From: Ginglymostoma cirratum
Lineage: Eukaryota
Assembly: GCA_024137785.1 (NCBI GenBank)
Contig: JAHRHZ010000085.1
Span: forward strand, 1,863,941-1,927,940
DNA: 64,000 nt
Direction of reading: 5' to 3'
The position numbers and the translations under genes are program-made. A model generated the notes under the pieces. It was given only the letters and a program-made list of their open reading frames with translations, did not search any database and was not told where the DNA came from. Below, one piece after another: positions 27,948 to 61,690 of this stretch (positions are counted from its first letter, which is position 1; each line of letters starts with the position of its first letter).

Positions 27948-28150
27948 GCAGCACGATTGCTTAATGGTTAGCACTGTTGCCTCACAGCACCAGGACCTGG
28001 GTTCAGTTCCCGCCTCGGGCGACTGTGTGTGTGGAGTTTGCATGTTCTCCTTGTGCCTATGTGGCTTTCCTCTGGGTGCTCCAGTTTCCTCCCACAGACC
28101 AAAGATGGGCAGGTTTGGGTGGATTGGCCACGCTAAATTGCCCAGTGTGC
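27948..28150 (+). mobile_element. HE1-type V-SINE (3' truncated)
   Basis: HE1 head and V-domain sequence. Confidence 0.85.
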
Positions 28151-28194
28151 ACTGTCCACTGGCATACTCATGGCCTTCTGTACCTGTTGGCCCC

Positions 28195-28558
28195 TTGGTA
28201 TTTATTCCTTCGTGGAATGTGGGCATCACTGTTCAGTCCAGGACTTGTTCCCAATTTCTAAGTGCCCTTCAGAGTCAGCCGCACTACTGTCGATCTGGAT
28301 TCACATATCAGCCAAACCAGATAAAGGTGGCAGACTTCCTTCCCTAAAAGGTATTGGTGAGCCAGCTTTTATTTTGCAGAAATTGGTGTTGGCTATGTTG
28401 TCACCATTATTGAGACTAGCTTTCAATTCCAAATATGATTAATTAAATTTATTTTCCACAAGTTGGTGTTGTTGGATTTGAGCTCACATCCTCAAATAAT
28501 TAGTTTGGACTTGTGGTTTATGGATCCAGCAGCATTACCACGATGTCATCATCTCCTT
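28195..28558 (-). mobile_element. SINE of the 24253 family
   Basis: Antisense tail and the ggcagacttccttccctaaa core. Confidence 0.65.
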
Positions 28559-41589: not shown

Positions 41590-41734
41590 CTAACTGTTAT
41601 GAGTAATTGAAAAGAAAATCTTAATGAAGTATATTTTAAAACTTTGACCATCATATTCCACTGGAGGATGTTCACTGCATGGCTCTAACTTTCCACTGGT
41701 TACATTGTTTCTCTTGGTCGCTTCACTTCGACAC
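41590..41734 (-). CDS. Exon: cytoplasmic tail (R)CRSEATKRNNVTSGKLEPCSEHPPVEYDG..., to TAG at 41590 or spliced out at 41649
   Basis: Acceptor cctcacttttctttgagcag|G is phase 2 and matches the TM exon donor. The frame is open and hydrophilic. Confidence 0.65.
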
Positions 41735-44700
41735 CTGCTCAAAGAAAAGTGAGGAATCAGGATAACCCTTTCAAAATTTCTATGATTAGAAACCATTGAC
41801 AGTAATTTTGCAGTAACCCCTATCAAGGCAGTGACAATGACAGCAAGCTAATTCACAGAAAAAAATGGAGGGCAAGTAATTTAAACACACTTTTGATGTA
41901 AAAGAAATTTAAGTAGAGATTTAACAGGTAATTATAGACTGGTTATTCTGATATCAATAATAGGGAAATTGCTAGAGTCCATTGCAAAAGATTTAAAACA
42001 GCATACTTGGGAAGCAGTGAGAGATAGTAAGAACTGCTAATGCTGGAGTCAGAGATAATGCAGTGCGGAGCTGGAGGAACGCAGCAGGCCAGGCAGCATC
42101 AGAGGAGCAGGAAAGTTTACGTTTCGGGTCAGGACCCTTCTTCAGAAATGGGGCCCAGTGTGTTCCTCCAGCTTCGCACTACTTAGGAAACAGCGACAGG
42201 ATTGGACAGTTAGCATGGATTTACAAAACAGAAATTATGATTGAAAAAAAAAACTACTGGAACTTTTCCCAAGTGTAACTAGTAGAGTTAATAAGAGGAA
42301 GCCAGTGGATGTGCTTTACTTGGACTTTCAGAAGGCTTTCAGCAATGTCCCACATAAGGGGCTGGCATGTAATGTTAAAAAGCATGGATTTGGGGATAGT
42401 GTCTTGAGATGGATAGAAAACTAGTTAGCAGGTAAGAAACAAACAGTAAGAATAAATGGGTCTTTTTTTCTGAGTGGCAGGCTGTGTTGCAGTGTTCAGT
42501 GCTTTGACTCCAGCTATTCACATTTATAAATGATTTCAATGAGGGAACTAAAAGAGTGTACTGATGGAAATGGAGTGTAAACAGATACACTAGTAACATT
42601 CAGAAAGAAATTTGAGAAATCATTTAAAAGAAGTAAAGCAAATGCAACATTTCCGTGAAAGGCCAAGAGTATATGGACTTCTGTACCCACTATTTGAGAG
42701 TGATGACTTATTTGAAGACCTCAGTTCAAAGTGGGAAAAGATTTTTATTGAAGTGTAAATACTGGGAACTTGATAACAGAGCCAAGATTGGCTCCAAAAT
42801 TAATTAACAAATTTCATACCTTCTTTCCATGTTATAAGTCTACAAATGCTGTTGAACATTAGAATTCTGTCTTAAAACGCTTACCGAAAGAACCTATCTG
42901 ATGCAATATGGTCGAATATGATCACTGCTAGTATAATAATTACCAATATCCCCAATATGGATCGATAAATCAGGTGGCCAGGAATGACAACATGATAATC
43001 TGGAAAAGTATAAGGTAATCAGTGACTCACTCAGAACATACCATTTTAATAACATTTTGACAGCTGAAGAATCCAGAATCATCGTGTATTCAACTTGCTA
43101 GCCTCTAAACCCACTCATAGTTGCTCAAAGCAATATAGGCTATTGAATATTTTACAGTTTAAGTGCATTAGGGTACAATAAAAATGAATTTGTTTATTTG
43201 CCAAGAAATTGCCCACGCTTTGGTAAATGTTGTGTTTCTCCGTTATGCTTTTCCATATGAAAAATAAAATCCAAAGAACATAATTTAAAAGTCCTCTTTT
43301 CAAGCAATCATAGATGAATTAGCTATTTAGTATTATTGGATTCATTCACGGGATGCATGCATCGCTGGTTAGGACAGCATTTATTACCTTTCCTGAATTT
43401 GGCACTTGAGCAGTAGTTGGAAAGAGGGTGAGTTTATTAAAGCAAAATAAAAATCATGGGATATGGGCAACTGTATCTAGGCTAAAATATATTGTCCATC
43501 TCTAATTGCCCTGGAGAAGGTAATGATATTATCCATTTTTGATTCACTGCAATCTATGTCAGAGAGTCATAGGGTCATAGAGCTGTATAGCATGGAAACA
43601 GACCCTCTGGTCCAACTCATCCATGCCAACCTTATATCCTGAATTAACCTAGCCCCATTTCTCAGCATTTGGCCCATATCCCTCTCAATGCTATTCATGT
43701 ACCTGTCAATATGCTTTTTAAATGTTATAATTGGACCAGCCTCCACTGCTTCCTCTGGCAGCTCATTCCATACATGTACCAATCCCTCTGTGTGAAAAGG
43801 TTTCCCCTTGGGTCCCTTTTAAATCTTTCCCCTCTAACCTTGAACCTGGGCCTCTAGGTTTGAACTCACCTACCTTGGGGAAAAGATCTTGTCTATTGAC
43901 CCTATCCATGCCCCTCGTGATTTTACAAACCTCAAAAAGGTCACCCCTCAGCCTCTGAAACTTCAGGTAAAATAGCCCCAGTCTATTCAGCCTCTCCCTT
44001 TAACTCAAACCCTCCAACTCTGGCAACATCCCTGTAAATCTTTTCTGAATCCTTTAAGTTTCACAATATCCTTTCTATAGCAGGGAGATGAGAATTGTAC
44101 ACAGTATTCCAATAGTGGACTAATTAATGGCCTGTACAGCCACAACATGACCACCCAACTCCTACACTCAATGCATTGACCAATAAAGACAAGCATACCA
44201 AACGCCTTCTTCACAATTCTGCAACTCCACTTTCAATGAACTCTGAACCTGCACTCCATGGTCTCTTTGTTTGGCAACACTCCCCAGGACCTTACCATTA
44301 AGTGCATGTGATGTACAGTTTTGCACAATTCTGTTAGGGAGAGGGTTTCAGGATTTTGACACAGTAATGGTGAAGGAATAATGATACGGTTCCAGGACAG
44401 GATGGTGTGTGGCCTAGGTTGGAACTTGCAGGTGCTGGTGTTCCCATGTATCTACTGCCCTTGTGGTACTGATCATAGGTTTGTAAATTGCTGTCTAAGC
44501 AGCTTTGAGGAATACAAATAGGACATGTTCAAGAAACATATTTAGATGGCGTGCATGCTGAAACTGACCTGGTACTACTTCTTGATATCATATATTAAGA
44601 CTCCTATTTGTTTTGGTTATCTGTATTACCGATGTTACATTGGGGATTGTAAATAAATAGCCATAGCACCATTTAATATAAGAGCCAATTGAGTCTATTC

Positions 44701-47700
44701 TGCCAGTTAATACGATTATAGCTGGTACGGCAGTACTCAGCAACACTTTCTTGTCTTTTCTTCAACCCTTGATTTCCTCACTCAATAAAATGTATTGCAG
44801 TCTTGAATATATACAATGACATAGTCACTACAGCCATCTGCAGTGAGGAATTCCACAGATTCACTACCCTCAGAGAAGAAATTTCTCCTAATCTCTATTC
44901 TAACTAGATGACTCCTTACGCTGAGATTATGGGTTCTGATCCTAGACAGGGGGTCAGCAACCTTTCAGCATTCAACTTGTCAAGCCACCTAAGAATATTA
45001 TATGTTTCAAGAATGTTACCTGTCATTCTTCTAAACTCAAATGAGTACAGGCCCAACATACTCAACCTTCCCTATAAGAAAATTCCTCGATACCAGGATC
45101 ATCCTAATGAAGCTTCTCTGGACTGTGCCCCAGTGCCAGTATATCTTTACTTCAATAAAGAGAACAAAGCTGTTAATGGCATTCTAAATATGGTCTAACT
45201 AGTGCCTTTAAAAACCTTCCTATTCGTGGATCCCATTCTCTTTGACATAAAGGTCAACTATCCATTTATTTTCCTGATTACCTGCTGAACTTGTATGATA
45301 GGTTTGTGATTAATGCATGAGGACCCCAAATTGTTTGTGCTCCAGTTTTCTGCAAATTTTCTCCATTTCAATAATACTCCATTTTTCTTCCTGCCAAAGT
45401 GGAATATCTCACATTTTCCTACTTTACATTCCAACTGCTAAGTATTTCCCTCCTGCATATCCTGTCTATATCTCTGTAGCCTGTGGCACCTTGGTCACTT
45501 GCCTTCCCATTTATTTTTGTGTCATCTGCTAACGTGGTGATAGCACATTCACTGCACTCATCCAATTCATTTACATTCGAAATACTGTGGCCCGAGCATT
45601 GATGTCTAAGCACTCCACTAATTATAGGTTAAATATAGATTATAGATACCCTCTCTGTCCCAATTTTCTGTTTTCTGCTCGTTAGATAATTCCGTATCAA
45701 TATTAATATATTTCCTCTAATATAATGGACTCATCTTAGTAAGTTGTCTTATGTATGGTACCTTATTGAACACCTTTTTGAAATCCAAAAATATTACATT
45801 TATTGATTCCTCATTCTTGTTTATTAACCCCTGAAATGATTCTAGTAAATTTGAGAGCCATGAATTAGTCTTTATTTTATTAAATAATCCCTACAGTGTG
45901 GAAAGAAGCCACTGAGCCCTTTGAGTCTGCACCAACCCTCCAAACAGCATCCCACTCAAGCCTAGACTCACATTGTATCCCATAATCCTGCATTTACCAT
46001 GGCTAATCCACATAGCCTGCACACTATGGGGCAATTTAGCATGGTCAATCCACCTAACCTGTGCATCTTTGGACTGTTGGAGGAGACCAGAGCTCCTGGT
46101 AGAAACCCACACGGACAAGGGGAGAATGTGCAAACTCTACACGGACCGTCACCCAAGGCTGGAATCAAACCCAGGTCTCTGGTGCTGTGAGGCAACAAAG
46201 CTAACCACTGTGCTGACTTTGCTTACTTATGTTATGTATCTATAAATGATATGCAATTATATAATTTACAATAAGGCCTAATATTTTGCCAATGACAGAT
46301 ATGAAGCTAATTAGCCTATAATTACCTGATTCTTTTTGTTTCCCTTGCCCTTTGAAGCAAAGTGTTACAATGGCAGTTTTCCAATCCTATGGAACTTTTC
46401 CATTAGCTCTCTAGCAACTGTCTTTAATATACTAGCATACATCTGACAGGTTCTGTCAGCCTTTAACCGCATCAATTTCTCTTGGACCTATTGTCTCGTG
46501 ACAATTATTGTATTGATCTCTGCTGACTTTGTGTTTTTCACTTTGAAGAATACGCAATGACAGGGTTAAAGAAGCAACTCTGCTGAAGTGCACTTGTGGG
46601 ACAAAATGCTGTTATATGAACCAGCCTGGGTTTGAGTGGTAAAATTCTGAGAAGATCATAGTCCAATATTTATCCTTTAGGTACCCTGTGTTACAGCAAA
46701 AAGACCATTCCCTGCTCTGAGTGCTAGTTATGTTGTGGAGTGAGTTTGCAGATTAATTTCAATGCAGAGATTAAAAAAAGTAATGAATTTTGGTAGGAAG
46801 AACATGAAGAAACAATGTAGAAGAAAGGTACAATTCTCCAGGGTTGGAAGGCAGGAGGAACATTGATGTTTATATACATAAATCATGAAAGGACACAGGA
46901 CAAGTTAGAGAGCTATTAAAACAAAATTCGGTACTTAGTGCGTTATTGATTGATGCAGAGAGTATAAGAGCAAACAGTTTATGTTGAAAAATTATGAAAG
47001 GCAGCTTGGGTCTCAGCTAGAATACTGCATCCATTTCCAGTCACCACCTTCAGGAAGGATCTTAAGGAACTGACGAGGTTACAGAACCAATTCACAGGAT
47101 AGTTCTAGGGGTGAAAATTTCTCCAATGAATATCAATACAGGTAAGTTATCACTATTTAGCTTAAAGAAAGAAAAGCTGTGATTTAAGTGGATTGAGGTT
47201 TTCAAAATCACTTGTCAGAGTGGATAAGAAGGAACAGTTCCCATCTAAGAAAAAAATCAAGAACAAGAGGGAACAAATTTAAACTAAAAAGTAAAATAAG
47301 CAAAAATAGTGTGGTTTGGTTCCAGAAGGCACCGCACAGGTTAAGAATTTAGAATTTCACAATAGCTTCAAACAAGTAGCTGGGAAGGAAGAATGTGCAT
47401 GATTCTACGGAGAAGACAGGGAAGTGGCATTCAATGTGTTCCTCACACATGGGGTAGGCACCACGAGCCAAAAGGTGTTGTTCTGTGCTGCAAAGCATCT
47501 GTAATTTTGAGACTTCTGTGTGGTAACTTTCATATTTACATATTGATGAGAATTGGGATTAGATTATCAGGAATTTTATGATCCCTTGTAGAACATTGCA
47601 TCCATTGTCAACACATTATTAGAGGTTTGGTTGAAGATGTCACCGGGCATCATCCTCATTTGCTGATTCAATTAAAACTATGCCATATGTTGACTGAGTC

Positions 47701-50700
47701 ATGAAGGAGAATGTTAACTGGCCATTCTCCTTTAACATTTGAAATGTTCCAATTAGCTTACATCTTCACTGCTTTACGTTGATACAATCTAGCTCCCAGA
47801 GCTCAACTTAATCTGAAATGTCACATCTTTGATGCCATCAAACAAATCATATTTTGTGTCATACAAATTAATCAGGCAACATCTTCATATCATGTCTAAA
47901 TTCAGTCTATCCAGCAATGTGTATATGCTAGACATAAACACAGGGAACCCATTACCCCAGTTTAGAAATCTACTGTCCTTTTCTGAGTCTCTCCGACTTG
48001 CTGCCAAGACCATTTTAAACCTCTCTGAAGCAGAACACTAAGCAGATTTTCTATTCAGTTAATTTAAATGCATTTCTACATGACACACTTAAAATTTCAT
48101 TACAACCAGGAGAATTTTCATCTGATATTACTTTGCAAACAATAACATTCTCAGTGTGCTTCTTTTGCAAATCTGCTTCAATGTTTATATGTACCTAAAA
48201 TCATTTTATAGGCTCCTTCACCCCTAGCTTCCTTTATCATTCTATACAGTACAATATTGTTGCCTAAATTTAGATAGATGAATGCATCCTGCCACATTAT
48301 TCATGTTATGTTAAGCCTACATACAATTCTGAAATACTAGTGGATTTGAAAATTCCACAGTACTATCAAAATTAAATACAGAATACTCTTTATATTTTAT
48401 AAGTAACCCAATATCTGCAGTTACAGCTCAACCACTGCTGATTGAACCATATAAATGCATCACGTTTGTTGTAATTTTACCTACGTTGTTGACAATGTAA
48501 CTGCAATTTGCTGGAACAGTGATAGAAACATGATAGACTTGACAGGTGTAAACTGTGCCATGCTCAATTGGCTGTGCCTCTTCTATGGAACTGATGACTT
48601 CATACAGTCCGTCTGCCGTTTCCTGCTGTACAGTTGTAATTCCTGTCAGAATTCTGGTGCTGTTTTTATGCCAGGTAACATTAAATTCCTTCGGGTGAAA
48701 CTCAGCCGTTTGACACTGGAGTCTCAAAAAGGTAGATGAAGACTTGTGGAACGATGTAGAGACAATCTTCAGGGGTACAGGAGCAGCTAAATTTAAAAAA
48801 AAAATAAAAAAAAGAGGATATCTTTAACTGCTTTATTTCATTTACATTGCTCAGCAATCATGTCAAGGCTTTGTAGTTGGATCTTAGATCAATGTTTCAT
48901 GTGAATGGGTTCCAAAATAATTCATTCCTTGCTGTCCAGCACTGAGGTGAAAATGATTGCTCTTCACATTGTGGAAACAGTTACTAAGCAGGCCAAATCA
49001 AAACCTTAGTAAGCCAGAATAAGTCGGGTGGGTGTTGTCCTGAGGAAGAGTCACCCAACCTGGAACATTAACTGATTTTTTTTTCACACACTGAAGCTGC
49101 CAGACCTGCTTAATTTTTCCAGCTACTTCTGTTTTTGTGCTCGTTTAAACATTTTCCATCAGGAATTAAACCAATTTTCCTTTGAGGAGTCTTTGCGAGA
49201 CTTCCTTGGCCAATACATTCCAAATTTAGAGGGATTTCTGTTGATTTTCACAGGTATCTTCCTCATTCTCAACCATTCCTTTGTTGTATGCTGCAGTAAT
49301 GCAGTAACACCACTCGACGCATTTGTACTGAATGATATATATTTATTTGTTTGTTTTCCTTTTTTTGAAAGATGTTATGGCACTAATCCTAAATATTATA
49401 TGCCTACGTGTTAAATATTTTATTTTGGAATATATAAATAAGACTTTAAAAAATTAATTGATGATAAATCTCTCATGTGCTGTTTCAGAAGTGGAAACAT
49501 AGACATTGTAGTCAATCCTTCTCCCTCAACCACACGTGGTATGCCCTCTGTTTTTCCAGCATGTCCAGTTAACATGTTGCTGGATGTTAAGATCCAGCAA
49601 CAACTCCCGTAGATTGTGATGAGCAATATCATTCTTGCATTATTTTACGTTATTGAAGGTTCATTGCTCTAGCTTGTTCAATACTGAGTGTCTATGGAAC
49701 ATATGGTGAACTTTTAGTGTCATAGAGTCATGGTGCAGAAGGAGGCTATTCAGCCAATTATATCTGTACCAGCTGTATTCCCTAGTGCCAATTTTGTGGC
49801 CTGTCCCCATACCCCTATGCAAAAACGTCCAAACACATGTTTTGCACTCATGGGACGTGTGTGTCGCTGGCTGGCAATGACTTTATTGTCCATCCCTAGT
49901 TGCCTTTGAACTGATTGTCTCGATACAGCATTTCAGAGGGCAGTTAAAAGTCAACCACATTGTGTGAGTCTGGAGTCATATGGAGACCAAACCAAGCAGA
50001 TTTCCTTCTTTAGTCATTGGTGAATTAATCATGAGTGAACTCGATCGGTTTTTCCAATGATCGTCAATGGTTGCATTGTCATCAGTCAATTCTTAATTCT
50101 GGAGTTTTTGTTAACTGAATTCAAATTCCACCATCTGCCGTGGTGGGACTTGAACCCGGATCCCCAAAACATTAAGCTGAGCTTCTGGGTTAAAAATCTA
50201 GCAACAATACCACTGCCGCCAGGGCTTCACCTCCCCACACCTCTTGAATTTCTCAATTGAACTTGCCTCTGCTACATTTCCAGGCAGTGCGTTCCACACC
50301 CTAACAGCTTTCTGTGTGAATTTGATTTGTTTTCTCGCATCATCCTTGCTTCATTGGAGGCCACCTCATCCATGTGTCTTTTACTAACAGAAACAGCTTT
50401 GCCCTATCTATTCTGTCCAGCATACTCATGTTTTTGAAAATCTCAATCAGATCTCCTTTCAAACTTCTTCTCTCCAGAAAGAACAATCCCAACTTCTTCA
50501 AGCTATTCTCATAGCTGAAGTTTCTCATCCCTGGAACCATTTTAATAAATCATTCCTGCACTCTCTGCAATGCTTTCACATCATTCCGATAATGTGGACC
50601 ACAACTATACACACTACTCCAGATGAGATCTAATAAGTGTCTTGTACAATTTCAACATCACTTCCCTTTCTTGAGATAGCTTTGAAGAACTTAAATGATC

Positions 50701-53700
50701 TCTGAGTAGGAGATCTGCTGGGGACCAGAAACCATAATATGGTAGATGTTAGCTTTCTGTTTGAGATTGGGTAATTTGGATTGGAGCAATTGTGCCAAAC
50801 TTAAATAAGGGTAGTTAAATAGGAATGAGGGCTGAGTTGTTTAGTGTGGACTGGGAAAATAATTTAGCAGAAAAGATGGTTGAGGAGCAAAAGCAAATAT
50901 TTAAGAAAATAATTCATGACTCATCACAAAGATATCTCCCGTTAAGGAAAAAGGATTCTTGGAAGGACATTCAACAAGCATGGTTATCCAGGAAAGTTAA
51001 GGATGGTATCAATTTCAAAGAAAATACATACAATTTGACAAATCTTAGCTGCAAACCAGAGAATTAGGAATGATTTAAAAGCTGTAAAAGATACATAAAT
51101 AAAATTAAGAGTGATCAAATAAACTATGAGGGGAAATTAACAAGCAAGTAGTAAGAGCTTATTTAAATATATTTAAAAAAAGGACAAGGGATTCCAAAAT
51201 GAACACTAGCTCCATAAACAAAAAGGCAGGGTTGACAAAATAGGAATGAGGAATCTGTAAATAGCAAATTGAAAAAAAATACTATGCATCAATTTTCATA
51301 GCATAGGGCATGTGGTGGTGGTGAAAATAAACACAGCAATTACCATGAGTGTACTGGGGAACCAAATGAGGTTCAAGGCTGACGAATCCCCTGGACCTGA
51401 TGAGGTGTATCCAAGGATTTTAAAAGAAGTAAATGCATATATAATGGATAAATTGATAGGAATCCTTAGTTTCTGGTCAAGTCCCAATTAGAAAACTGCC
51501 AATGTAACATTCTTATTCAAAAAGGGAGGGAGACCAAAAAAAAAGGTTATGTCACCAAAGGTGTCCCACAGGGATTGGTGCTGGTTGCACTTTTGTTTGT
51601 CATTTATATAAATGAATTGGATGAAAATGTAGAAGGCATGGTTAATAAGTTAATGGATGGCACCAAGATTGGTGGTATAGTGGCCAGTGCAAACGTTATC
51701 TAAGATTACAAAGAGATCTTGATGAATTGGGTCAATGTGTTGATGAGTTACAGATGCAGTTTAACTTGGATAAATGTGAGGTATTGCATTTGGTAAAATA
51801 AACAAGGGCAGGAATTATACAATTATAAGTAGGGCCTTGGGAAGTGTTGTAGAACAGACAGACCTAGGGTTCAGGTACATATTTCTTTGAAGTTTGCATC
51901 ACATATAGATAGAGTGGTTAAGAAGTCATTTAGCATGCTTGCTTTCATTGCTCAGGCCTTTGAGTATAGAAGTTGGGACATTATATTGAGGTTGTACAGT
52001 ACATTGGGTGAGGCCTCTTCTGGAGTTCTGTGTCCAGTTCTGGTCACCCTGTTATAGGAAGGATATTATTAAGCTGGAGAGGGTTCAGAAGCAATTTACC
52101 AGTATGTTGCCAGGATGGAGGGCTTAAGTTATGGGGAGAGGCTGGATCAGCTGGGACTCTTTTTCACTGGAGCATAGGAGATTATGGGTGAGCTTATAGA
52201 AGTTTTTAAACCATGAGGGCTATTAAAGAGGTGGTTAGCAGGTGTCTTTTCCATGGGGTGGGGGATTTCAAGAGTAGGAGACATATTCTTAAGGTGAGGG
52301 GAGAGACATTTATAAAAGACATGAGCGGCAATTTGTTATATGCAGGGAGTGGTTCATGTGTGGAATGAGCATCCAGAGGAAGTGATGGATGCTGGTGCAG
52401 TTACATTGTTTGAAAGACATTTGGATAAGTACATGAATAAGAAATATTTGGAGGGAAGGGGCCAAATGCTGGCAAGGTGGAAATTGTTTAGTTCGGGATT
52501 GTGGTCAGCACGGACTGGTTTGACCGAAGGGTTTGTTTTCATACTGTATGACTGTATGACTCTATGACTGTATGACAGGCTGGTTAACTTAACAGCTGTT
52601 AATATGAAATGTTAGAGTCTATTTTATAACATATACTTATGACTTGGATGATGGAATTGTGTATTCCATTGCCAAGTTTGTTGATGGCACACAGACAGTA
52701 AGTGGGTAGGCCAGCGTTGAGGCTGACACTGTAAGTCTTTAGAGAGATACGAACAGGCTAAATTAATGGTCAAAAGCTTGACAGATGTGGACAATATGAG
52801 GTCATGCATGTCAGCCGGAAGAACAGAAGAGCTGAATATGAATTAAAGGGGGAAATATTACAGAAAGCTGCAACACAGAGTGATTTAGACATTCCTAGTG
52901 CATGGATCACAAACAGCTAACAACCTCCAATCAGTGATAGGAAAGGCAAATTGCATGATCTTATTTCAAAAAGAATGGGGCAAAGAAATAGGGACATTTT
53001 GTTAAAACTATACAAGTGAGACACATCTAAAACAGTTCATTTTCCCTTATCTAAGGAAAGATGTATTGGCATCGAAGACAGTTCAGAGAAGGTCCACTGA
53101 GATGTTTCCAGGTGTGGGGGATTTTAGTGTGAGGAAAGGTTGAGTAGTTCAGGTTTGCAATCATTTGAGTTTAGAAGAATAGTAGGCAACCTTGTTGAAA
53201 CAGATATGATTCGTAGAGACAGTTAAAGATTCAATGGCTTCCCAGAGCATTTGCTGGGAGGTTGTTTCTCATTGGGGTTTAATGTAGGACCAAAGGGCAT
53301 CATCTCAGAGCAAGGAGTCACTCACTTAAAACAGACAAGGAAACATTTATTGTATTAGAAGGTGGTAAATCCATGGAATTCTTTTTGGCAGATGACTGTT
53401 GAGAGTGACATAATTCAGAACTGACATGGAGAGATGTTTAATCAATGGTTAGTGGGATAAGGCAGGAAAATGAAGTTGAAATCAGATCAGCCATGATCTC
53501 ATTGAACGGAGGAACAGACTTGATGGACAGAATATCAAACATCTGCTCCTTCAACTTATGGTCTTATTTTGTGATTTTACCAAATGACCATCAAAGGCAC
53601 AAAAACAGAAGTTGCCGGGAAAGCTCAGCAGGTCTGGCAGCACCTGTGAAGAAAAAAATCAGAGATAATATTTCGGGTCCGGTGACCCTTCCTCAGAACT

Positions 53701-54629
53701 GTTCTGTGGCCTACTCCTGTTCCAATGTCTCCTAAACGCTCTACGTTTATCATTTTTGCGACACTTACTGTACACAAGAAGTCGGAATCCGGTTCCTTTC
53801 ACAACTGTTTGATGATGATATTTGATGACACAGTAATACATTCCGGCGTCGGCAACAGTCACATTCAAAACATGAAGGTAGGCGCCGCCTCTCCTCACAT
53901 CGAAACTTTTTCTGCCGTTGGCTTGCAGGAAAGTCTTGTTACCGTCTTTCCACCAGTAAGCGATTACCGCCAAATGATTAAGATGGAAAGGGAAAGGACA
54001 ACGAAACGTAACGTTTCCACCCCGGTGCGTCGTCGTTTGTGCCAGATTTCTGTCATATTCGCCAGAGCTGCACACAGAAACTATCAACAAAATACCCACA
54101 ATTAAATCACAGCCAGAGTGAAAAAAAAAGACACTGCTAAAAATGCTATTGTGCGTCCCCTCATTTGTTACGTTAGTGGTACTGTCTAACCATACAAGTT
54201 AAACTATCCTGCTAACGAATACGTTTCCTGATTAAAATAACTAATGTTGCTTTTCATGTTCACATCATTCTTTTCTGCAAAAAATGCTCAATATGAAAAC
54301 ACATTGATGAAACTACAGCAGCAGAAAGCTACTTCATGTAGGACATTGATTCCATACACAAGTTCTTGTTCAGTGAAGTTTAATAATTAACATAAATACT
54401 AAATGGAAAGGAGCAGTCAACGTTTCGGGTATCACACTTCTTCAGGGCTCCAGTGATAACCGAAACGTTGATTGTTCCTTTCCTCCAGATGCTGCCTGGC
54501 ATGCTGTGATTTTCTCCTCATTGTCTAACTGCATCTGCATTTTTTTTTGCCTGTAATGAAATCCAAATGCCTACCAGCGCACAAAACTTCCAGGAAAGGT
54601 AGGTTGCAAAGTAATCGGATCTTCAACAT
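41590..54629 (-). CDS. Spliced Ig-superfamily type I membrane receptor, leader-V(J)-C1-TM(Arg)-cytoplasmic, ~310 aa (NKp30/SIRP/VJC1-like); join(complement 54575-54629, 53769-54080, 48481-48786, 42885-42999, 41590-41734)
   Basis: Five exons of 55+312+306+115+145 = 933 nt join in one frame through GT-AG introns of phase 1,1,1,2. Canonical Ig V and C1 motifs and a hydrophobic TM are present. The extent of the last exon is the least certain part. Confidence 0.85.
42025..42180 (-). mobile_element. Short Penelope-derived element with intact hammerhead core
   Basis: Minus strand CTGAAGA-A-GGGTC-CT-GACCC-GAAA-CG-TA at ~42118-42145, with a short inverted arm. Confidence 0.75.
42885..42999 (-). CDS. 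Exon: short stalk plus transmembrane helix with N-terminal arginine
   Basis: Acceptor cttatacttttccag|AT and donor TTTCG|gtaagc, phase 1-2. Translation DYHVVIPGHLIYRSILGILVIIILAVIIFDHIASDRFF(R). Not present in the ORF track. Confidence 0.85.
43563..44305 (-). mobile_element. CR1 LINE 3' part (intron 3)
   Basis: ORFs 43567 and 44005 contain LLEYCVQF and VHVWNELPEE. Confidence 0.88.
44680..45850 (-). mobile_element. Older CR1 LINE fragment
   Basis: ORF 45419 TLADDTKI plus CR1 3' motifs. Confidence 0.75.
45885..46213 (-). mobile_element. HE1-type V-SINE
   Basis: HE1 consensus on the minus strand. Confidence 0.88.
48481..48786 (-). CDS. Exon: Ig C1-set domain
   Basis: Acceptor poly-T...tttag|CT and donor GTAG|gtaaaa, phase 1-1. 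Translation (T)APVPLKIV...LRLQCQTAEFHPKEFNVTWHKN...DGLYEVISSI...VYTCQVYHVSITVPANCSYIVNNV has the C1 hallmarks CxxxxFxPxxxxVxW and YxCxVxH. Confidence 0.93.
49843..50222 (-). mobile_element. SINE of the 24253 family
   Basis: Antisense head (gtgggacttgaacccgg B-box) and tail. Confidence 0.75.
50250..53570. mobile_element. Cluster of CR1 fragments in intron 2 (- 50250-50670; + 50680-51540, 51545-52575, 52640-53570)
   Basis: GVPQG, EFCVQFWSP and WNE.PEEV motifs, with a (tatgac)n tail at 52545-52576. Confidence 0.82.
53595..53700 (-). mobile_element. Short Penelope-derived hammerhead repeat ~70 nt downstream of the V exon
   Basis: Minus strand AGTT-CTGAGGA-A-GGGTC-ACCG-GACCC-GAAA-TA-TT. Confidence 0.7.
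53769..54080 (-). CDS. Exon: Ig V-type domain with J-like G strand
   Basis: Acceptor ttttgttgatag|TT and donor TACA|gtaagt, phase 1-1. Translation (V)SVCSSGEYDRNLAQTTTHRGGNVTFRCPFPF...AYWWKDG...AYLHVLNVTVADAGMYYCVIKYHHQTVVKGTGFRLLVY shows B-strand Cys, C-strand Trp, DxGxYYC and GxG. Confidence 0.93.
54575..54629 (-). CDS. Exon: signal peptide MLKIRLLCNLPFLEVLCA
   Basis: ATG at 54629 (ggaggatATG) with an in-frame TAG upstream. Ends G|gtaggc (phase 1), which matches the V exon acceptor. A strong acceptor (ttctatttccatttctag) at 54661 implies an upstream 5'UTR exon. Confidence 0.75.
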
Positions 54630-54911
54630 ATCCTCCAGCGGAAGCTGCTAACTCACAGAGCTAGAAATGGAAATAGAAACAATTAAAACAAAGTTTCCAG
54701 TGTCTACAGCATCGTTTCAGAGCTGTTCGTGATGTCACCTGGCTTCTGCTTGCAACTGTAGAGTCTTTTGGTAGAAATCCGGACAGGTAGTTGGGAAGGA
54801 GATACAAAAGCATTGCCTTTACCCATGAAAGCGAACTTAGTAGAACTGTACGTAAGCCACATCAATTCAATTGTTTCCTTCATCTGCCGAGAGGGTCGAT
54901 AATATTGCATG

Positions 54912-55178
54912 CGGGCGGCACGGTGGCTCAGTGGTTAGCATTACAGCCTCACAGCACCAGGGACCCGGGTTCGATTCCGGTGTCAGATGGCTGTCTGTGT
55001 GGAGTTTGCACATTGTCTGTGTGTCCAAAGATGTGTGGACTAGGTGCGTTGGCCATGCTAAACTGCCCGTAGTGTTCAGGGGTGTGTGGGTTATAGGGGG
55101 CTGGGTCTGGGTGGGATGCTCCAAGGGTCAGTGTGGGCTTGTTGGGCTGAAGGGCCTATTTCCCCATTGTTGGGATTC
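54912..55178 (+). mobile_element. HE1-type V-SINE just upstream of the leader exon
   Basis: gggcggcacggtggctcagtggttagc...ggttcgattcc with A and B boxes. Confidence 0.9.
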
Positions 55179-55424
55179 TTCTTCTACTCAATGTTCTGAT
55201 GGTAAGAACCAAGCTTGATCTTAACCTAACCCTCTTAAGTACCAGAGGGCCATACTGTAGGTGTGTTAGCTGTTGAAATCACGTCTGGAAAACTAGGAAG
55301 TCTCATAGATTACCAAACTTCAGAGAGCAGTCCCATTCACCACGGATGAGAAAGAGCTTCACATTTTTGTCTGTTATCTTTCAATAAGGTCGATGTTACC
55401 TTTGATCATCTACATTAGCTATTT

Positions 55425-57975
55425 AGAACTTAGAACATAGAACAATACAGCACAGTACAGGCCCTTCAGCCCACAATGTTGTGCCAAATTTTTACCATGA
55501 ACTTAGTGTCTATCTAACCTCCACCGCTACCTTATACTATCATCCACATGCCTATCTAATAGCCACTTAAATGCCCCGAATGAGGCCAACGCCACTACCC
55601 TCTTCGGCAATGCATTCCACACCCCTACCACTCTCTGAGTAAAGAACTAGTCTGACGTTTCCCTGAGATCTACCTCCTATCACTTTAAAACTATGTCCCC
55701 TTGTAAAAGCAACCTCCACCCTAGGAAAAAGTCTCTGGATGTCCGCTCTATCTATACTGCTGATCATTTTGTACACCTCTATCAAGTCACCTCTTATCCT
55801 TCGTTGTTCTAAAGAGAAAAGCCCTAGCTCTCTCAACCTTTCCTCGTAAGGCCTTTCCTCCATTCCAGGCAACATCCTGGTAAATCTCCTCTGCACCTTT
55901 TCAAACACTTCCACATCTTTCCTGTAATGAGGTGCCCAGAACTGGACACAATACTCCAGATGTGGCTGAACCTGGCTTTTGTATAGCTGGAGCAAAACTT
56001 CACGGCTCTTGAACTCAATCCCTCTATTAATGAAAGCTAACAAACCATACGCCTTCTTAACAACTCTATCCACCTGGGTGGCAGCTCTCAGGGAACTGTG
56101 AACATGAACCCCAAGAACTCTCTGCTCCTCCACACTGCCAAGAATCTTTCCGTTAACCCTGTATTCTACTTTCAAGTTTGTCCTTCCAAAGTGAATCACC
56201 TCACAATTTTCAGGGTTAAACTCCATCTGCCACTTCTCAGCCCAGTTCTGCATTCTATCAACGTCCCTTTGTAACCTAGAACAGCCCTCTGCACTGTCTA
56301 CAACGTGACCCACCTTCGTATCGTCCGCGAACTTGCTAATCCACCTTTCCATTCCTTCATCCAAATCATTTACAAAAATCACAAATAGAAGAAGACCCAG
56401 AACAGATCCTTGTGGTACCACTCTTAACTGAGCACCATGTTGAATATTTTCTGTCCACTATCACCCTTTGTCTTCGAAGGGTCAGCCATTTCTGAATCCA
56501 ATCTGCCACATTTCCTCCTATCCCTTGCCTCCTTACCTTCTGCATGAGCCTGCCATGGGGAACCTTATCAAACGCCTTACTTAAATCCATGTATACCACA
56601 TCCACTGCTCCACCTTCATCCATGTGTTTGGTCACCTCTTCAAAGAATTCAATAAGGTTTATGAGGCATGATCTCCCCCTCACAAATCCATGCTGACTAT
56701 CATGAATCAAACTGTGCCTTTCCAAGTGATCATAAATCCTGTCTCTCAGAGCCCTTTCCAATAATTTGCCCACCACTGACGTAAGACTAACTGGCCTATA
56801 ATTTCCGGGGTTATCCCTGTTCCCTTTTTTGAACAAGGGAATGATGTTTGCCTCTTTCCAATCTTCCGGCACTATACCCGTGGACAGTGAGGATGAAAAG
56901 ATCATTGCCAAAGGCCCTGCAATCTCGTCCCTCGCTTTCCATGGAATCCTTGGATAAATCCCATCAGGCCCGGGGGACGTATCTATCTTCAACTTCCTCA
57001 GAATTCCTAGCACATCTTCTATACTAACATCAACCTCCTCTCGCCTACCAGCCTGTTTCACACTGTCCTCCTCTACAACTAGGTGCCTTTCAGTTGTGAA
57101 TACCAAAGAAAAGTATTCATTAAGGACCTCTCCTATCTCTTTAGGCTCTGTGCACAAATTCCCTTTACAATCCTTGATCAGCCCTACCCTTTCTCTGGTC
57201 ATTCTCGTGTTCTGCAACATACATGTAAAAAACCTTGGAGTTTTCCGTCATCCTATCCGCCAAGGTTTTCTCATGGCCCCTTATAGCTCTCCCGAGCCCT
57301 TTCTTCAGCTCCTTCCTGGCTAACTTGTATCCCTCTGGATCCTTTTCTGTTCCTCTTTTCCTAAACCTTACATAAGCCTCCTTCTTCCTCTTAACTGTCG
57401 TTCGCCCTCTCTCGAGAACCATGCCTCCATCACTCGACTGCATCTTCTGTGCCTGCTAGGGACAAACGTGTCGAGCACATTCAGTATGCATTCCTTAAAC
57501 AATCTCCACATTTCTGTGGTGCTCTTCCCTGACAGCATCTGTTCCCAATTTATGTTACCCAGTTCTTGCCTAACTGAATTGTAAATACCCTTCCCCCAAT
57601 TATAAACTTTACCCTGCCGTATGTACCTATCCTTATCCATGACTATCGTGAAAGAAACAGAGTTATGATCGCTACCGCCAAAATGCTGTCCTACCAACAG
57701 GTCTAACACTTGGCCCGGTTCGTTGCCAAGTACCAAATCCAAAGTGGCCTCTCCTCGTGTTGGTCTATCTACATACTGTGTCGGGAATCCTTCCTGAACA
57801 CACTGGACAAAATCTGCTCCATCTAAACTATTACAACTAAAATGTTTCCAATCGGTATTTGGAAAGTTGAAGTCACCCATGACTACAACCCTGTGACTTC
57901 TGCACCTTTCCAGTATCTGTCTCCCAATCCGCTCCGCTGCTTCTCTGCAACTATTAAGGGGTCTGTAAAAAGAAC
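55425..57975 (-). mobile_element. Young CR1/HER1 LINE, most of ORF2 (EN to RT to 3' tail), frameshifted
   Basis: ORFs 57368 (MGDFNFP, LDLVLGNE), 56366 (SPGPDGI, NYRPVSLTS) and 55567 (PQGSVLG, KFADDT), with a (tagaaca)n tail. Confidence 0.95.
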
Positions 57976-60444: not shown

Positions 60445-61690
60445 CAGGTCGTGTCTCACAAACCTCATTGAAATTTTTGAGAAGGTGACCAAGCAGGTGG
60501 ATGAGGGTAGGGCAGTTGACGTGGTGTACATGGACTTCAGTAAAGCCTTTGATAAGGTTCCACACGGTAGGCTATTGGAGAAAATGCGGAGGCATGGGAT
60601 TGAGGGAGATTGAGCAGTTTGGATTAGAAACTGGCTTTCTGAAAGAAGGCAACGAGTGGTGGTTGATGGAAAATATTCAGCCTAGAATCCGGTTACTAGT
60701 GGTGTGCCACAAGGATCTGTTTTGGGACCACTGCTGTTTGTCATTTTTATAAATGACTTGGACGCAGACATACGTGGATGGGTTAGTAAGTTTGCAGATG
60801 ACACTAAAGTCGGTGGAGTGGTGGACAGTGTGGAAGTATGTTGCAGGTTGCAGGGAGACTTGGATAAACTGCAGAATTGGGCTGAAAGGTGGCAAATGGA
60901 GTTCAATGCAGATAAATGTGAGGTGATGCACTTTGGGAAGAATAATAGGAAGGCAGAATACTGGGTCAATGGAAAGATTCTTGGTAGTGTGGATGTGCAG
61001 AGGGATCTTGGTGTCCAGGTACATAGATCCCTGAAAGTTGCCACCCAGGTTGATAGTGCTGTTAAGAAGGCATACGGTGTGTTAGGTTTCATTGGTAGAG
61101 GGATTGAGTTCCGGAGCCGGGATGTCATGCTGCAACTAGACAAAACGCTAGTGCGGCCTCACTTGGAATATTGCGTACAGTTCTGGTCGCCCCATTACAG
61201 GAAGGATGTAGAAGCATTGGAAAAGGTGCAGAGGAGATTTACCAGGATGTTGCCTGGTCTGGAGCGAAGGTCTTATGAGGAAAGGCTGAGGGACTTGGAT
61301 TGGAGAGAAGAAGGCTAAGAGGGGATTTAATAGAGACATACAAGATGATCAGAGGATTAGATAGGGTGGACAGTGAGAGTCTTTTTCCTAGGATGATGAC
61401 GTCGGCTTGTATGAGGAGGCATAGCTGCAAAGTGAGGGGTGATAGATTTAATACAGATGTCAGAGGCAGGTCCTTTACTCAGAGAGTGGTAAGGGTGTGG
61501 AATGACCTGCCTGCCAATGTAGTCAACTCAGCCACATTAGGGGCATTTAAACAGTCCTTGGATAAGCATATGGATGATGATGGAATAGTGTAGGTTAGAT
61601 GGGCTTCAAATTGGTTTCACAGGTTGGCGCAACATCGAGGGCCGAAGGGCCTGTTCTGCGCTGTATTGTTCTATGTTCTATGTTCTATGT
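60445..61690 (+). mobile_element. Young CR1/HER1 LINE RT to 3' end
   Basis: ORF 60704 PQGSVLGPLLFVIFINDLD...KFADDT, with a (ttctatg)n tail. Confidence 0.95.

What the first reader, a model, noticed from the sequence alone, without database searches (positions are those of the whole stretch)
41590..54629. Non-rearranging antigen-receptor-like gene (leader-VJ-C1-TM-cyt) hidden among transposons
Seen: five exons with canonical splice sites and matching phases encode ~310 aa, with one V domain already carrying a J-like GxG strand, one C1-set domain, a TM and a tail. The leader and TM exons are absent from the ORF track. Established: C1-set domains are essentially confined to jawed-vertebrate immune molecules (Ig, TCR, MHC, beta2m, tapasin, SIRP, some B7 members), and V-C1-TM is the layout of a single TCR chain. 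Inference: this is a cartilaginous-fish innate receptor resembling the proposed pre-RAG VJ-C1 ancestor of antigen receptors, possibly from a poorly described multigene family.
Basis: partly seen in the sequence, partly recalled or inferred. Interest (0 to 1): 0.9.

Follow-up and report, generated by a model that had tools for sequence, protein, structure and literature searches.

The report
Shark SIRP-like V-C1 activating receptor gene
This is a real, intact and transcribed shark gene for a small cell-surface immune receptor (one variable-type domain, one antibody-type constant domain, a membrane anchor carrying an arginine). It is one more member of a large SIRP-like receptor family that public annotation already predicts in sharks, rays and chimaeras, not a unique relic of the antigen-receptor ancestor.

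Summary
The five-exon minus-strand model is confirmed. All junctions are GT-AG with phases 1-1-1-2, and the product is about 310 aa: leader, V, C1, TM and a short tail. Pfam gives V-set (6e-9) and C1-set (5.9e-11). Assembled contigs from two runs of the same species end or join exactly at the V boundaries, and one joins V to C1 across the 4,982-base intron. The gene is therefore spliced and germline-joined.

It is not an orphan. An "uncharacterized" Chiloscyllium punctatum protein is colinear with the V, C1, TM and tail exons, and its leader resembles the predicted one (V 79%, C1 87% identity, near-identical TM). Every V+C1 relative I looked up was chondrichthyan, labelled automatically SIRP-alpha/beta-like, NCR3LG1-like, tapasin-related or Ig-lambda-like.

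The family has inhibitory members with ITIM tails and short-tailed members with an arginine in the TM. The window gene is the arginine type, so it is probably an adaptor-coupled activating receptor (inferred).

The V domain is compact (56 residues from Cys to Cys, no C'' strand). Its likeness to antigen receptors is architectural only.

This scan has already followed up the same family several times on this chromosome and elsewhere in this genome. Verdict: new member of a known kind, moderate-to-low interest.

The parts
54575..54629 (-). Exon 1 coding part: start codon and 18-residue leader (MLK...), phase-1 donor GTAGGC. The 5' UTR was not mapped.
   Evidence: Read from the sequence. It has the same length, the same phase and the same MLK start as the leader of orthologue P0001. 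No RNA contig shown to me confirms it. One X1 contig runs through the donor to 54544.
53769..54080 (-). Exon 2: compact V-type Ig domain with a germline-joined J-like G strand (GTGFRLLV). Cys27 to Cys83 of the exon translation; three N-glycosylation sequons.
   Evidence: Pfam V-set 6.1e-9. 79% identical to the P0001 V domain. AF2 model pLDDT 90.1 with no C'' strand. RNA-type contigs start exactly at 54080 (X2 record 15) and end exactly at 53769 (X1 record 7, X2 record 9).
48481..48786 (-). Exon 3: C1-set Ig domain (YTCQVYH motif).
   Evidence: Pfam C1-set 5.9e-11. PDB hits are Ig CH, MHC-I alpha3, UrIg2, Ig CL and SIRP-alpha d3. 87% identical to the P0001 C1 domain. X2 contig record 9 joins 53769 to 48784/48786.
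42885..42999 (-). Exon 4: short stalk and transmembrane helix, with Arg near the outer end and Asp-His at the inner end (LIYRSILGILVIIILAVIIFDH).
   Evidence: Hydropathy scan; sequence. Family HMM hit 3.5e-5. tblastn to P0001 gives 79% identity. The core motif HLIYRSILGILVIIILAVIIFDH is identical in P0001 and closely similar in S. torazame and Heptranchias proteins.
41590..41734 (-). Exon 5: 47-residue cytoplasmic tail and stop codon. One conserved tyrosine (VEYDGQ); no canonical ITIM or ITAM.
   Evidence: Sequence. 58-59% identical to the tails of P0001/P0151. The GenBank model P0151 reads on in the same way (GYDGECFKIHF against EYDGQSFKIYF).
48787..53768 (-). Intron 2 (4,982 bases), filled with high-copy repeats, including LINE reverse-transcriptase debris at about 51.3-52.6 kb and very high-copy elements at 49.85-50.25 kb and 53.45-53.85 kb.
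   Evidence: ORF translations with RT-like motifs. Contig depths of 10^3 to 10^6 in those bins against single digits over the exons.

Best explanation
The locus is an intact, transcribed, single-copy gene for a type I membrane protein of about 310 aa. Its parts are a signal peptide, one compact V-type Ig domain whose G strand carries a germline-encoded J-like motif, one C1-set Ig domain, a transmembrane helix with an arginine near its outer end, and a 47-residue tail without ITIM or ITAM.

It is the short-tailed, charged-TM (activating-type) form of a receptor family found throughout cartilaginous fishes. Other members of that family have almost the same ectodomains but uncharged TMs and long tails with LTYAAL-type ITIMs.

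The likely mechanism is that of paired receptors such as SIRP-beta/SIRP-alpha. The V domain binds a ligand that is still unknown. The TM arginine recruits an ITAM-bearing adaptor with an acidic TM residue (of the FcR-gamma, CD3-zeta or DAP12 class), and this triggers activation in leukocytes. ITIM-bearing relatives deliver the opposing signal.

Shown here: gene structure, domain types, V-C1 splicing, family membership, and the existence of both tail types in the family. Inferred: adaptor coupling, cell type, ligand binding and activating function.
For: Gene model:
- Canonical splice sites and compatible phases.
- Pfam V-set and C1-set, both above the curated cut-offs.
- Spliced contigs from two runs of the same species (0 mismatches). 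X2 record 9 joins 53769 to 48784/6, X1 record 7 stops at 53769, and X2 record 15 starts at 54080.

Orthologue and family:
- Orthologue P0001 (XP_072403667, C. punctatum, 292 aa) is colinear with the V, C1, TM and tail exons, and its leader resembles the predicted one in start, length and phase. Identity is V 79%, C1 87%, with the same TM core motif.
- V and C1 trees both put the window exon with P0001/P0151 (SH-aLRT 99). Both place it inside a 12-13-member elasmobranch subfamily (99) that also holds ITIM-tailed Heterodontus proteins P0003 and P0159.
- The family alignment shows the conserved NGTGxxLxV J-like strand, the C1 hallmarks and both tail types.
- The TM arginine recurs in shark and ray members.
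- NCBI's automatic names for members include SIRP-alpha-like and 'signal-regulatory protein beta-1-like'.
- A family profile finds SIRP-alpha (6e-28) and SIRP-gamma (8e-25) in PDB. Among the 60 hits shown these are the only named cell-surface receptors other than CEA; the rest are antibody chains, UrIg2 and titin.
Against: - No experiment or expression profile links the gene to leukocytes or to any adaptor.
- SIRPs have two C1 domains; this gene has one (one search finds no second C1 exon).
- PDB scores do not separate SIRP from Ig light chains or UrIg2 as the nearest relative.
- The tail keeps a conserved tyrosine (VEYDGQ; VGYDAL in P0001, which fits the ITIM pattern), so signalling may not be purely through an adaptor.
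- An acidic residue at the inner end of the TM (FDH) is not a feature of classical activating receptors.
- The leader exon and the last two junctions lack RNA confirmation.
Confidence: 0.7

Rival explanations
1. It is a B7-family-type ligand (B7-H6/PD-L1-like V-C-TM with a short tail) rather than a receptor. It would be displayed on cells and read by a receptor on lymphocytes.
For: NCBI names several family members 'natural cytotoxicity triggering receptor 3 ligand 1-like' or 'CD276 homolog'. The PD-L1 V domain is the best V-type sequence hit in PDB for the V exon (about 6e-7). The PD-L1 ectodomain gives the best TM-score for the two-domain model (0.46/0.60). The layout V-C-TM-short tail with phase-1 exons is shared.
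Against: The family has ITIM-tailed and arginine-TM members with near-identical ectodomains, which is the hallmark of paired receptors and not of B7 ligands. It has a conserved J-like GxG-x-L-x-V strand. The family profile hits SIRP-alpha and SIRP-gamma, and no B7 member appears among the top 60 PDB sequences. PD-L1's better TM-score reflects the straight V-C arrangement of the model, at only 16-17% identity.
Confidence: 0.08
2. [quoted passage not shown] On this reading it stands closer to antigen receptors than to SIRPs.
For: It has a single-exon V with a J-like strand followed by a C1 domain. UrIg2 is the second-best PDB hit of the family profile (3e-33) and a top hit of the C1 exon (9.6e-9). 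Foldseek puts lambda VL, TCR V-alpha and shark IgNAR V among the neighbours of the V model, at 24-27% identity. Published work treats VJ-C1 genes as relics of the precursor (PMC12227049, PMC10751288).
Against: The V domain is compact and lacks C''. No Ig or TCR V appears among the top 60 PDB sequence hits of the V exon, which are I-set domains and PD-L1. Among the best 150 of 1.84 billion representatives, every V+C1 protein I looked up was a chondrichthyan family member and none was an Ig or TCR. UrIg/UrIg2 are multi-C-domain homodimers linked to the MHC or the antigen-receptor complex, and that linkage could not be tested here. UrIg2's high score is inflated by its three C1-type domains.
Confidence: 0.12
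3. It is an expressed but decaying copy: a pseudogene in the making, or a decoy without signalling function. Several neighbouring family members reported by this scan are of that kind.
For: Earlier notes of this scan report broken copies in the same cluster (not tested here). The tail diverges most (58% to the orthologue) and lacks canonical motifs. The leader has Asn, Pro and Glu inside its hydrophobic core. One X1 contig reads through the leader donor.
Against: All five exons are open and all splice sites are canonical. Key structural residues are kept: both Cys pairs, the Trp, DxGxYxC and YxCxVxH. The TM core motif is identical to the orthologue's. Spliced contigs are present in two runs.
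Confidence: 0.1

Closest known systems
SIRP family (SIRP-alpha/PTPNS1, SIRP-beta, SIRP-gamma) of tetrapods
   Same: Both have an N-terminal V domain with a germline J-like G strand, followed by C1-set domain(s). Both are paired receptor families, with ITIM-tailed inhibitory members and short-tailed members that have a basic TM residue. The ITIM wording of the shark inhibitory members (LTYAAL.L) resembles SIRP-alpha's; this last point is from my memory of SIRP-alpha and was not tested. NCBI's pipeline names many members SIRP-alpha-like or SIRP-beta-1-like. SIRP-alpha and SIRP-gamma are among the best PDB hits that are not antibody chains.
   Different: This gene has one C1 domain, not two. The V domain is compact (56 residues from Cys to Cys, no C'' strand). 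The TM has an arginine near the outer end plus Asp-His at the inner end, where SIRP-beta has a mid-TM lysine. Orthology, synteny and CD47 binding were not tested.
XP_072403667 / GCC37682 (Chiloscyllium punctatum, 'uncharacterized protein'), the orthologue or closest relative
   Same: It has the same five-part layout and the same exon phases, as implied by the junction residues. It shares the same TM core motif and is 79% identical in V and 87% in C1.
   Different: It comes from another species. The tail is 58% identical, and the RefSeq model ends earlier (VGYDAL) than the GenBank model.
UrIg / UrIg2 (elasmobranch non-rearranging antibody-like genes; PMC12227049)
   Same: A non-rearranging single-exon VJ-type V followed by a C1-type domain, in elasmobranchs. 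UrIg2 is a strong profile hit.
   Different: UrIg has three C domains and is secreted. UrIg2 has nine C domains and forms disulfide-linked homodimers. Neither has paired ITIM and arginine-TM forms. They are linked to the MHC or the antigen-receptor complex, which could not be tested here.
NKp30 (NCR3)
   Same: A V domain with a J-like GxGT-type strand, an arginine in or near the TM, a short tail and adaptor-coupled activation. This is from established knowledge and was not tested here.
   Different: NKp30 has no C1 domain. NKp30 structures do not appear among the top 60 PDB hits of the V exon.
Ig light chains / TCR chains (including shark germline-joined Ig genes)
   Same: A V + C1 two-domain ectodomain. 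Fab light chains are the top Foldseek hits for the two-domain model, and lambda VL is among the top hits for the V model.
   Different: Identity is only 17-27%. The locus has no RSS and no separate V and J segments. It has a TM exon with an arginine and a cytoplasmic tail. It belongs to a family with ITIM tails. The V domain is compact and lacks C''.

Membership tests
Chondrichthyan SIRP-like V-C1 paired-receptor family (known only from automatic annotation) | Leader, V with an NGTGxxLxV-type G strand, one C1-set domain and a TM, all colinear with family members | tested here: met
   tblastn of 28 family proteins hits the V and C1 exons colinearly; P0001, P0151 and P0156 also hit the tail, and P0001 and P0151 the TM. 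Family HMM E-values are 1e-43 (V), 8e-52 (C1) and 3.5e-5 (TM).
Chondrichthyan SIRP-like V-C1 paired-receptor family (known only from automatic annotation) | Phylogenetic placement of both domains inside the family | tested here: met
   V tree: with P0001/P0151 (99) inside a 13-row subfamily (99). C1 tree: the same, inside a 12-row subfamily (99). No outgroup families were available, so the trees show placement within the family only.
Chondrichthyan SIRP-like V-C1 paired-receptor family (known only from automatic annotation) | Activating-type signature: a basic residue in the outer TM and a short tail without ITIM | tested here: met
   The TM reads LIYRSILGILVIIILAVIIFDH and the 47-residue tail has no [SIVL]xYxx[IVL]. 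The same R-containing core motif is present in P0001, and closely similar ones in P0156, P0157 and P0158; rays keep WIVRG.
SIRP family proper (tetrapod SIRP-alpha/beta/gamma) | V-C1-C1 ectodomain (three Ig domains) | tested here: not met
   There is only one C1 exon. The family HMM finds no further Ig exon anywhere in the 64 kb window. The orthologue P0001 also has a single C1.
SIRP family proper (tetrapod SIRP-alpha/beta/gamma) | Sequence closer to SIRP than to other C1-bearing families | tested here: inconclusive
   SIRP-alpha scores 6e-28 and SIRP-gamma 8e-25. UrIg2 (3e-33), Ig heavy chains and light chains (about 1e-23 with only two domains) score similarly once domain number is taken into account. 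No SIRP reference sequence could be fetched for a tree.
SIRP family proper (tetrapod SIRP-alpha/beta/gamma) | Conserved synteny with the SIRP locus; CD47 binding | not testable with these tools
Rearranging or germline-joined Ig/TCR genes | V and J as separate segments with RSS, or a V domain that groups with Ig/TCR V | tested here: not met
   The V exon runs uninterrupted through the J-like strand to a GTAAGT donor. The transcript contig splices V directly to C1. No Ig or TCR V is among the top 60 PDB sequence hits. Every V+C1 protein among the 150 best representatives that I looked up belongs to this family. No formal tree with Ig/TCR was built.
VJ-type V domain (as in antigen receptors, SIRP, NKp30) | G strand with a J-like GxGTxLxV motif | tested here: met
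   The window has GTGFRLLV, with Phe in place of the canonical Thr. The family consensus is NGTGSKLxV.
VJ-type V domain (as in antigen receptors, SIRP, NKp30) | Full V-set topology with C' and C'' strands (about 65-75 residues from Cys to Cys) | tested here: not met
   Cys27 to Cys83 is 56 residues. The AF2 model (pLDDT 90) has no strand between C (38-44) and D (57-62). The Pfam V-set match covers only model positions 44-109, and I-set domains are the top PDB hits.
C1-set Ig domain | Pfam PF07654 above the gathering score, and the YxCxVxH motif | tested here: met
   43 bits against a cut-off of 21, E=5.9e-11. YTCQVYH is present. PDB hits are Ig CH, MHC-I alpha3, Ig CL, UrIg2 and SIRP d3.
UrIg/UrIg2 | Several C1-type domains after the V domain, homodimer, linkage to the MHC or the antigen-receptor complex | tested here: not met
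   It has a single C1 followed by a TM. Linkage could not be tested.

The most novel reading that the evidence does not exclude
The window gene and its shark and ray orthologues could form an old orthologous lineage, kept since the shark-ray split. It would be an activating V(J)-C1 receptor with an unusual TM signature: Arg at the outer end in sharks and rays, plus Asp/Asn-His at the inner end in the shark members. Such a lineage could stand near the common stem of SIRPs and antigen receptors. That would make it a minimal one-V, one-C1, adaptor-coupled receptor of the kind proposed for the pre-RAG precursor.
Probability: 0.12. Interest if true: 0.65.

Novelty: new member of a known kind. Interest (0 to 1): 0.33.

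Why it matters
Non-rearranging receptors that join a J-bearing V domain to a C1 domain are the material from which models of antigen-receptor origin are built (SIRP, NKp30, UrIg/UrIg2, PRARP). Cartilaginous fishes carry a large, clustered V-C1 paired-receptor family that is annotated only automatically and under inconsistent names. I found no held paper that describes it.

This gene adds one intact, transcribed, arginine-TM member with an orthologue in another shark. It is a usable entry point for asking which adaptor and which ligand the family uses. It could also be included in domain trees with SIRP, UrIg and Ig/TCR.

As a single locus it does not change the picture. The scan has already met the family repeatedly in this genome.

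Tried and rejected
- **Chance ORFs or pseudo-exons.** Rejected: Pfam, the family HMM, the colinear orthologue and the spliced contigs all agree.
- **A second C1 exon or other family copies in the window.** None found.
- **Relatives outside Chondrichthyes.** The V exon was searched against 1.84 billion representatives, followed by three word-indexed searches (P0001, alignment A1, P0159). Every V+C1 protein I looked up was chondrichthyan. The three small non-chondrichthyan hits I looked up (frogs, a goby) are multi-Ig proteins without a C1 domain. My A1 search used a 1e-10 cut-off, which hid any weaker hits. The word filter also limits reach, so absence from bony vertebrates is not shown.
- **ESM Atlas look-alikes of the V exon.** Only generic V-set/I-set clusters came back.
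- **Foldseek of the two-domain model and of the V model.** The first gave Fab light chains and PD-L1. The second gave lambda VL, IgLON5, BTLA, IgNAR V, TCR V-alpha, titin and PD-L1, all at 15-27% identity. This does not discriminate between families.
- **Literature.** Searches for NKp30/shark/C1, SIRP/cartilaginous fish/paired receptors, PRARP, 'antigen receptor precursor' and 'signal regulatory protein'/shark found no description of this family. The NKp30/B7H6, UrIg 2023 and coevolution papers are not held.
- **Joined protein.** Exons were searched apart by reference, and the orthologue P0001 served as the full-length proxy.
- **C1-TM and TM-tail junctions in RNA.** Not testable.

Full report
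**Observation**

The gene lies on the minus strand. Reading the DNA and checking it by script gives five coding exons:

| Exon | Coordinates | Boundaries |
|---|---|---|
| Leader | 54629-54575 | ATG at 54629, 18 codons plus 1 base, donor GTAGGC |
| V | 54080-53769 | acceptor TTGATAG, donor GTAAGT |
| C1 | 48786-48481 | acceptor AAATTTAG, donor GTAAAA |
| TM | 42999-42885 | acceptor TTTTCCAG, donor GTAAGC |
| Tail | 41734-41590 | acceptor TTGAGCAG, stop TAG at 41592-41590 |

The phases are 1, 1, 1 and 2 and they fit one another.

Each exon was searched by reference, and the full-length orthologue from another shark served as a proxy.

**Domains**

- Pfam scores the V exon as V-set (E=6.1e-9, 36.5 bits, cut-off 26). 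It scores the C1 exon as C1-set (E=5.9e-11, 43 bits, cut-off 21).
- The C1 exon's best PDB sequence hits are Ig constant domains, MHC class I alpha3, UrIg2, shark NAR C and SIRP-alpha d3.
- The V exon ends in KGTGFRLLVY, a J-like GxG-x-x-L-x-V strand contiguous with the rest of V. There is no RSS and no separate J segment.
- The V domain is compact. The exon translation has 56 residues from Cys27 to Cys83.
- The AlphaFold model of the window's own V exon (pLDDT 90.1) has no strand between C and D, so there is no C'' strand.
- Consistent with this, the V exon's best PDB sequence hits are I-set domains (titin, contactins, DCC) and the PD-L1 V domain, not Ig or TCR V.
- Foldseek neighbours of the V model are a mixture of lambda VL, IgLON5, BTLA, shark IgNAR V, TCR V-alpha, titin and PD-L1, at 15-27% identity.

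**Transcription**

Two runs labelled as the same organism match the window without mismatches over the exons.

- X2 contig record 9 carries 53865-53769 followed directly by 48784-48650. The two bases between the aligned blocks fit 48786-48785. It therefore skips the 4,982-base intron exactly at the predicted GT...AG.
- X1 record 7 ends exactly at 53769, with 20 further unplaced letters.
- X2 record 15 starts exactly at 54080, with 149 unplaced letters upstream. That is enough for the leader plus a 5' UTR.

A contig that skips an intron at its splice sites can only come from cDNA or from a processed retrocopy, so the gene is transcribed and spliced.

Several things are not shown:

- No listed piece covers the leader exon in spliced form.
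- One X1 contig (record 8) reads from upstream through the leader donor to 54544. It may be unspliced RNA, DNA or repeat-derived; that bin has high repeat depth.
- The C1-TM and TM-tail junctions lay outside the 6 kb I was allowed.

A third run set (organism B) carries colinear genomic contigs about 3-4% diverged, including the V exon.

**Relatives**

The V exon was searched against 1.84 billion representative proteins. The best hit was a 292-aa protein, P0001, at 79% identity (E=1e-50). Below it came a series of 250-450-aa proteins that match in a single stretch near their N-terminus.

P0001 is XP_072403667, an 'uncharacterized protein' of Chiloscyllium punctatum, and GCC37682 is an older model of the same gene. 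It aligns colinearly to the V, C1, TM and tail exons of the window, at 77%, 78%, 79% and 58% identity by tblastn.

- Its leader begins MLK and has the same length.
- It has the residues V-D at the C1/TM junction, which fixes the C1 donor at GTA G|gtaaaa.
- Its TM core motif HLIYRSILGILVIIILAVIIFDH is identical to the window's.

Every V+C1 relative for which I looked up names came from a cartilaginous fish: Heterodontus, Heptranchias, Scyliorhinus, Carcharodon, Mustelus, Stegostoma, Hemiscyllium, Chiloscyllium, Pristis, Hemitrygon, Hypanus, Mobula, Narcine, Leucoraja and Callorhinchus.

Their automatic names are inconsistent. They include 'tyrosine-protein phosphatase non-receptor type substrate 1-like' (SIRP-alpha-like), 'signal-regulatory protein beta-1-like', 'NCR3 ligand 1-like', 'tapasin-related protein-like', 'immunoglobulin lambda-1 light chain-like', 'CD276 homolog' and 'uncharacterized'.

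The three small non-chondrichthyan hits I looked up (two frogs, a goby) are multi-Ig proteins without a C1 domain. Within a species the members sit on one chromosome-sized contig.

**Family anatomy**

The alignment of 28 members shows these conserved features:

- a YWW(K/R)xG motif after the C strand;
- DSRKxF, LLNV and DxGxYYC;
- a G strand reading NGTGxxLxV;
- the C1 hallmarks (CxTAxFYP, W, YTCxVSH).

Two kinds of C-terminus occur:

- an uncharged TM with a long tail carrying LTYAAL-type ITIMs and TVYAE/Q motifs;
- a TM with Arg near the outer end and a short tail, followed in the shark members by Asp/Asn/Glu-His at the inner end.

Several species have pairs with near-identical V domains but opposite tails, for example P0170/P0176, P0137/P0177 and P0135/P0143. 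That is the pattern of paired receptors.

In separate V and C1 trees the window exon groups with P0001/P0151 (SH-aLRT 99). Both place it inside a 12-13-member subfamily (99) of sharks and rays that contains arginine-TM members and the ITIM-tailed Heterodontus proteins P0003 and P0159. These were quick trees on about 100 columns without outgroup families, so they place the gene within the family and nothing more.

The window holds a single copy. A family HMM run against all six frames hits only the V, C1 and TM exons, and there is no second C1 exon.

**What it most likely is and does**

It is the activating-type member of a chondrichthyan paired V-C1 receptor family. The arginine sits four residues into the helix (LIYR|SILG...). 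From established knowledge of FcR-gamma/CD3-zeta- and DAP12-coupled receptors, this is the arrangement that recruits an ITAM adaptor through an acidic TM residue.

The tail has no ITIM or ITAM, but it keeps a tyrosine conserved with the orthologues (VEYDGQ here, VGYDAL or GYDGE in Chiloscyllium, GEYECH in S. torazame).

Adaptor coupling, ligand and cell type are inferences; nothing here tests them.

**Comparison with known families**

The closest named family is SIRP. It shares a V with a J-like strand, C1 domain(s) and the paired ITIM/basic-TM forms. Automatic annotation uses the name. SIRP-alpha (6e-28) and SIRP-gamma (8e-25) are, apart from CEA, the only named cell-surface receptors among the 60 PDB hits of the family profile that were shown.

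Membership in SIRP proper is not established:

- there is one C1 domain instead of two;
- the V domain is shorter;
- the PDB scores do not separate SIRP from UrIg2 (3e-33, but with three C1-type domains), from Ig heavy chains or from light chains (about 1e-23 with two domains).

The two-domain model of the orthologue (pLDDT 82.8) finds Fab light chains and PD-L1, which is again generic.

It is not a rearranging or germline-joined Ig/TCR gene. It is not UrIg-like in architecture. It has a C1 domain, which NKp30 lacks.

I could not fetch reference sequences of SIRP, UrIg, PRARP, IgL or TCR, so no cross-family tree was built.

**Context**

The rest of the window is transposon debris:

- LINE reverse-transcriptase and endonuclease ORFs at 55.6-57.9 kb, 60.7-61.3 kb, 8.9-9.5 kb and 16.1-16.8 kb;
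- very high-copy repeats inside intron 2.

Earlier notes of this scan, which I did not test, report further SIRP-like V-C1 genes on the same chromosome at about +55 kb, +370 kb, +745 kb, +845 kb and +7.7 Mb from the window's end, and more on other pieces. If so, this gene lies at one edge of a large cluster. The scan has already found this family repeatedly in this genome.

**Literature**

The held library has the UrIg2 paper (PMC12227049) and the cartilaginous-fish MHC paper (PMC10751288). Both discuss VJ-C1 genes (UrIg, NKp30, PRARP) as relics of the antigen-receptor precursor. Neither mentions SIRP or this family. Other searches found nothing specific. Several key papers are not held, so 'undescribed' means 'not found in what I could read'.

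**Verdict**

The gene is a real non-rearranging V(J-like)-C1-TM receptor from a poorly described multigene family. It is one ordinary member with an annotated orthologue, of the SIRP-like paired-receptor kind. Nothing found here places it especially close to the antigen-receptor ancestor.
- Novelty: new member of a known kind.
- Interest: about 0.33.

Noticed in passing
window 53450-53850 (peak about 53599-53707), also 49850-50250 and 51450-52450: Extremely high-copy repeats lie inside intron 2. Summed contig depth reaches 10^4-10^6, against single digits on the exons. Many contigs join the 53.65-53.70 kb element to the 49.04-49.12 kb region in opposite or skipped arrangements. This suggests copies of one short interspersed element directly downstream of the V exon.
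   Followed up: no
window 55567-57880 (-): A LINE with three consecutive open pieces lies just upstream of the gene: endonuclease (Exo_endo_phos_2, 1.6e-6) and two reverse-transcriptase parts (RVT_1, 9.5e-19 and 3.6e-10). Further RT fragments lie at 60704-61318 (+), 8981-9460 (+) and 16113-16757 (-).
   Followed up: partly
window 45968-46245, 27964-28347 and 54791-55218: A recurring short element appears on both strands and flanks the gene's 5' end. Its translations share motifs such as HSTRD(L/P)G(L/S)IP and AKLP. It is probably a SINE family.
   Followed up: no
window 16119-16218: A run of 100 N (assembly gap or mask) lies inside a LINE RT fragment.
   Followed up: no
window 54544-54640 and upstream: A 402-base contig of run X1 matches without mismatch from upstream of the start codon, through the predicted leader donor, to an A-run at 54548-54541. 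It could be unspliced pre-mRNA, DNA carry-over or an alternative first exon.
   Followed up: no
family proteins P0170/P0176, P0137/P0177-P0178, P0135/P0143, P0003/P0004 (other species): Within-species pairs have nearly identical V domains but opposite tail types (ITIM against arginine-TM or truncated). This suggests repeated gene conversion or recent duplication between inhibitory and activating partners.
   Followed up: partly
P0182 (Callorhinchus milii, 489 aa): One chimaera member has a tandem V-C1-V-C1 ectodomain, so the family also makes four-domain forms.
   Followed up: no
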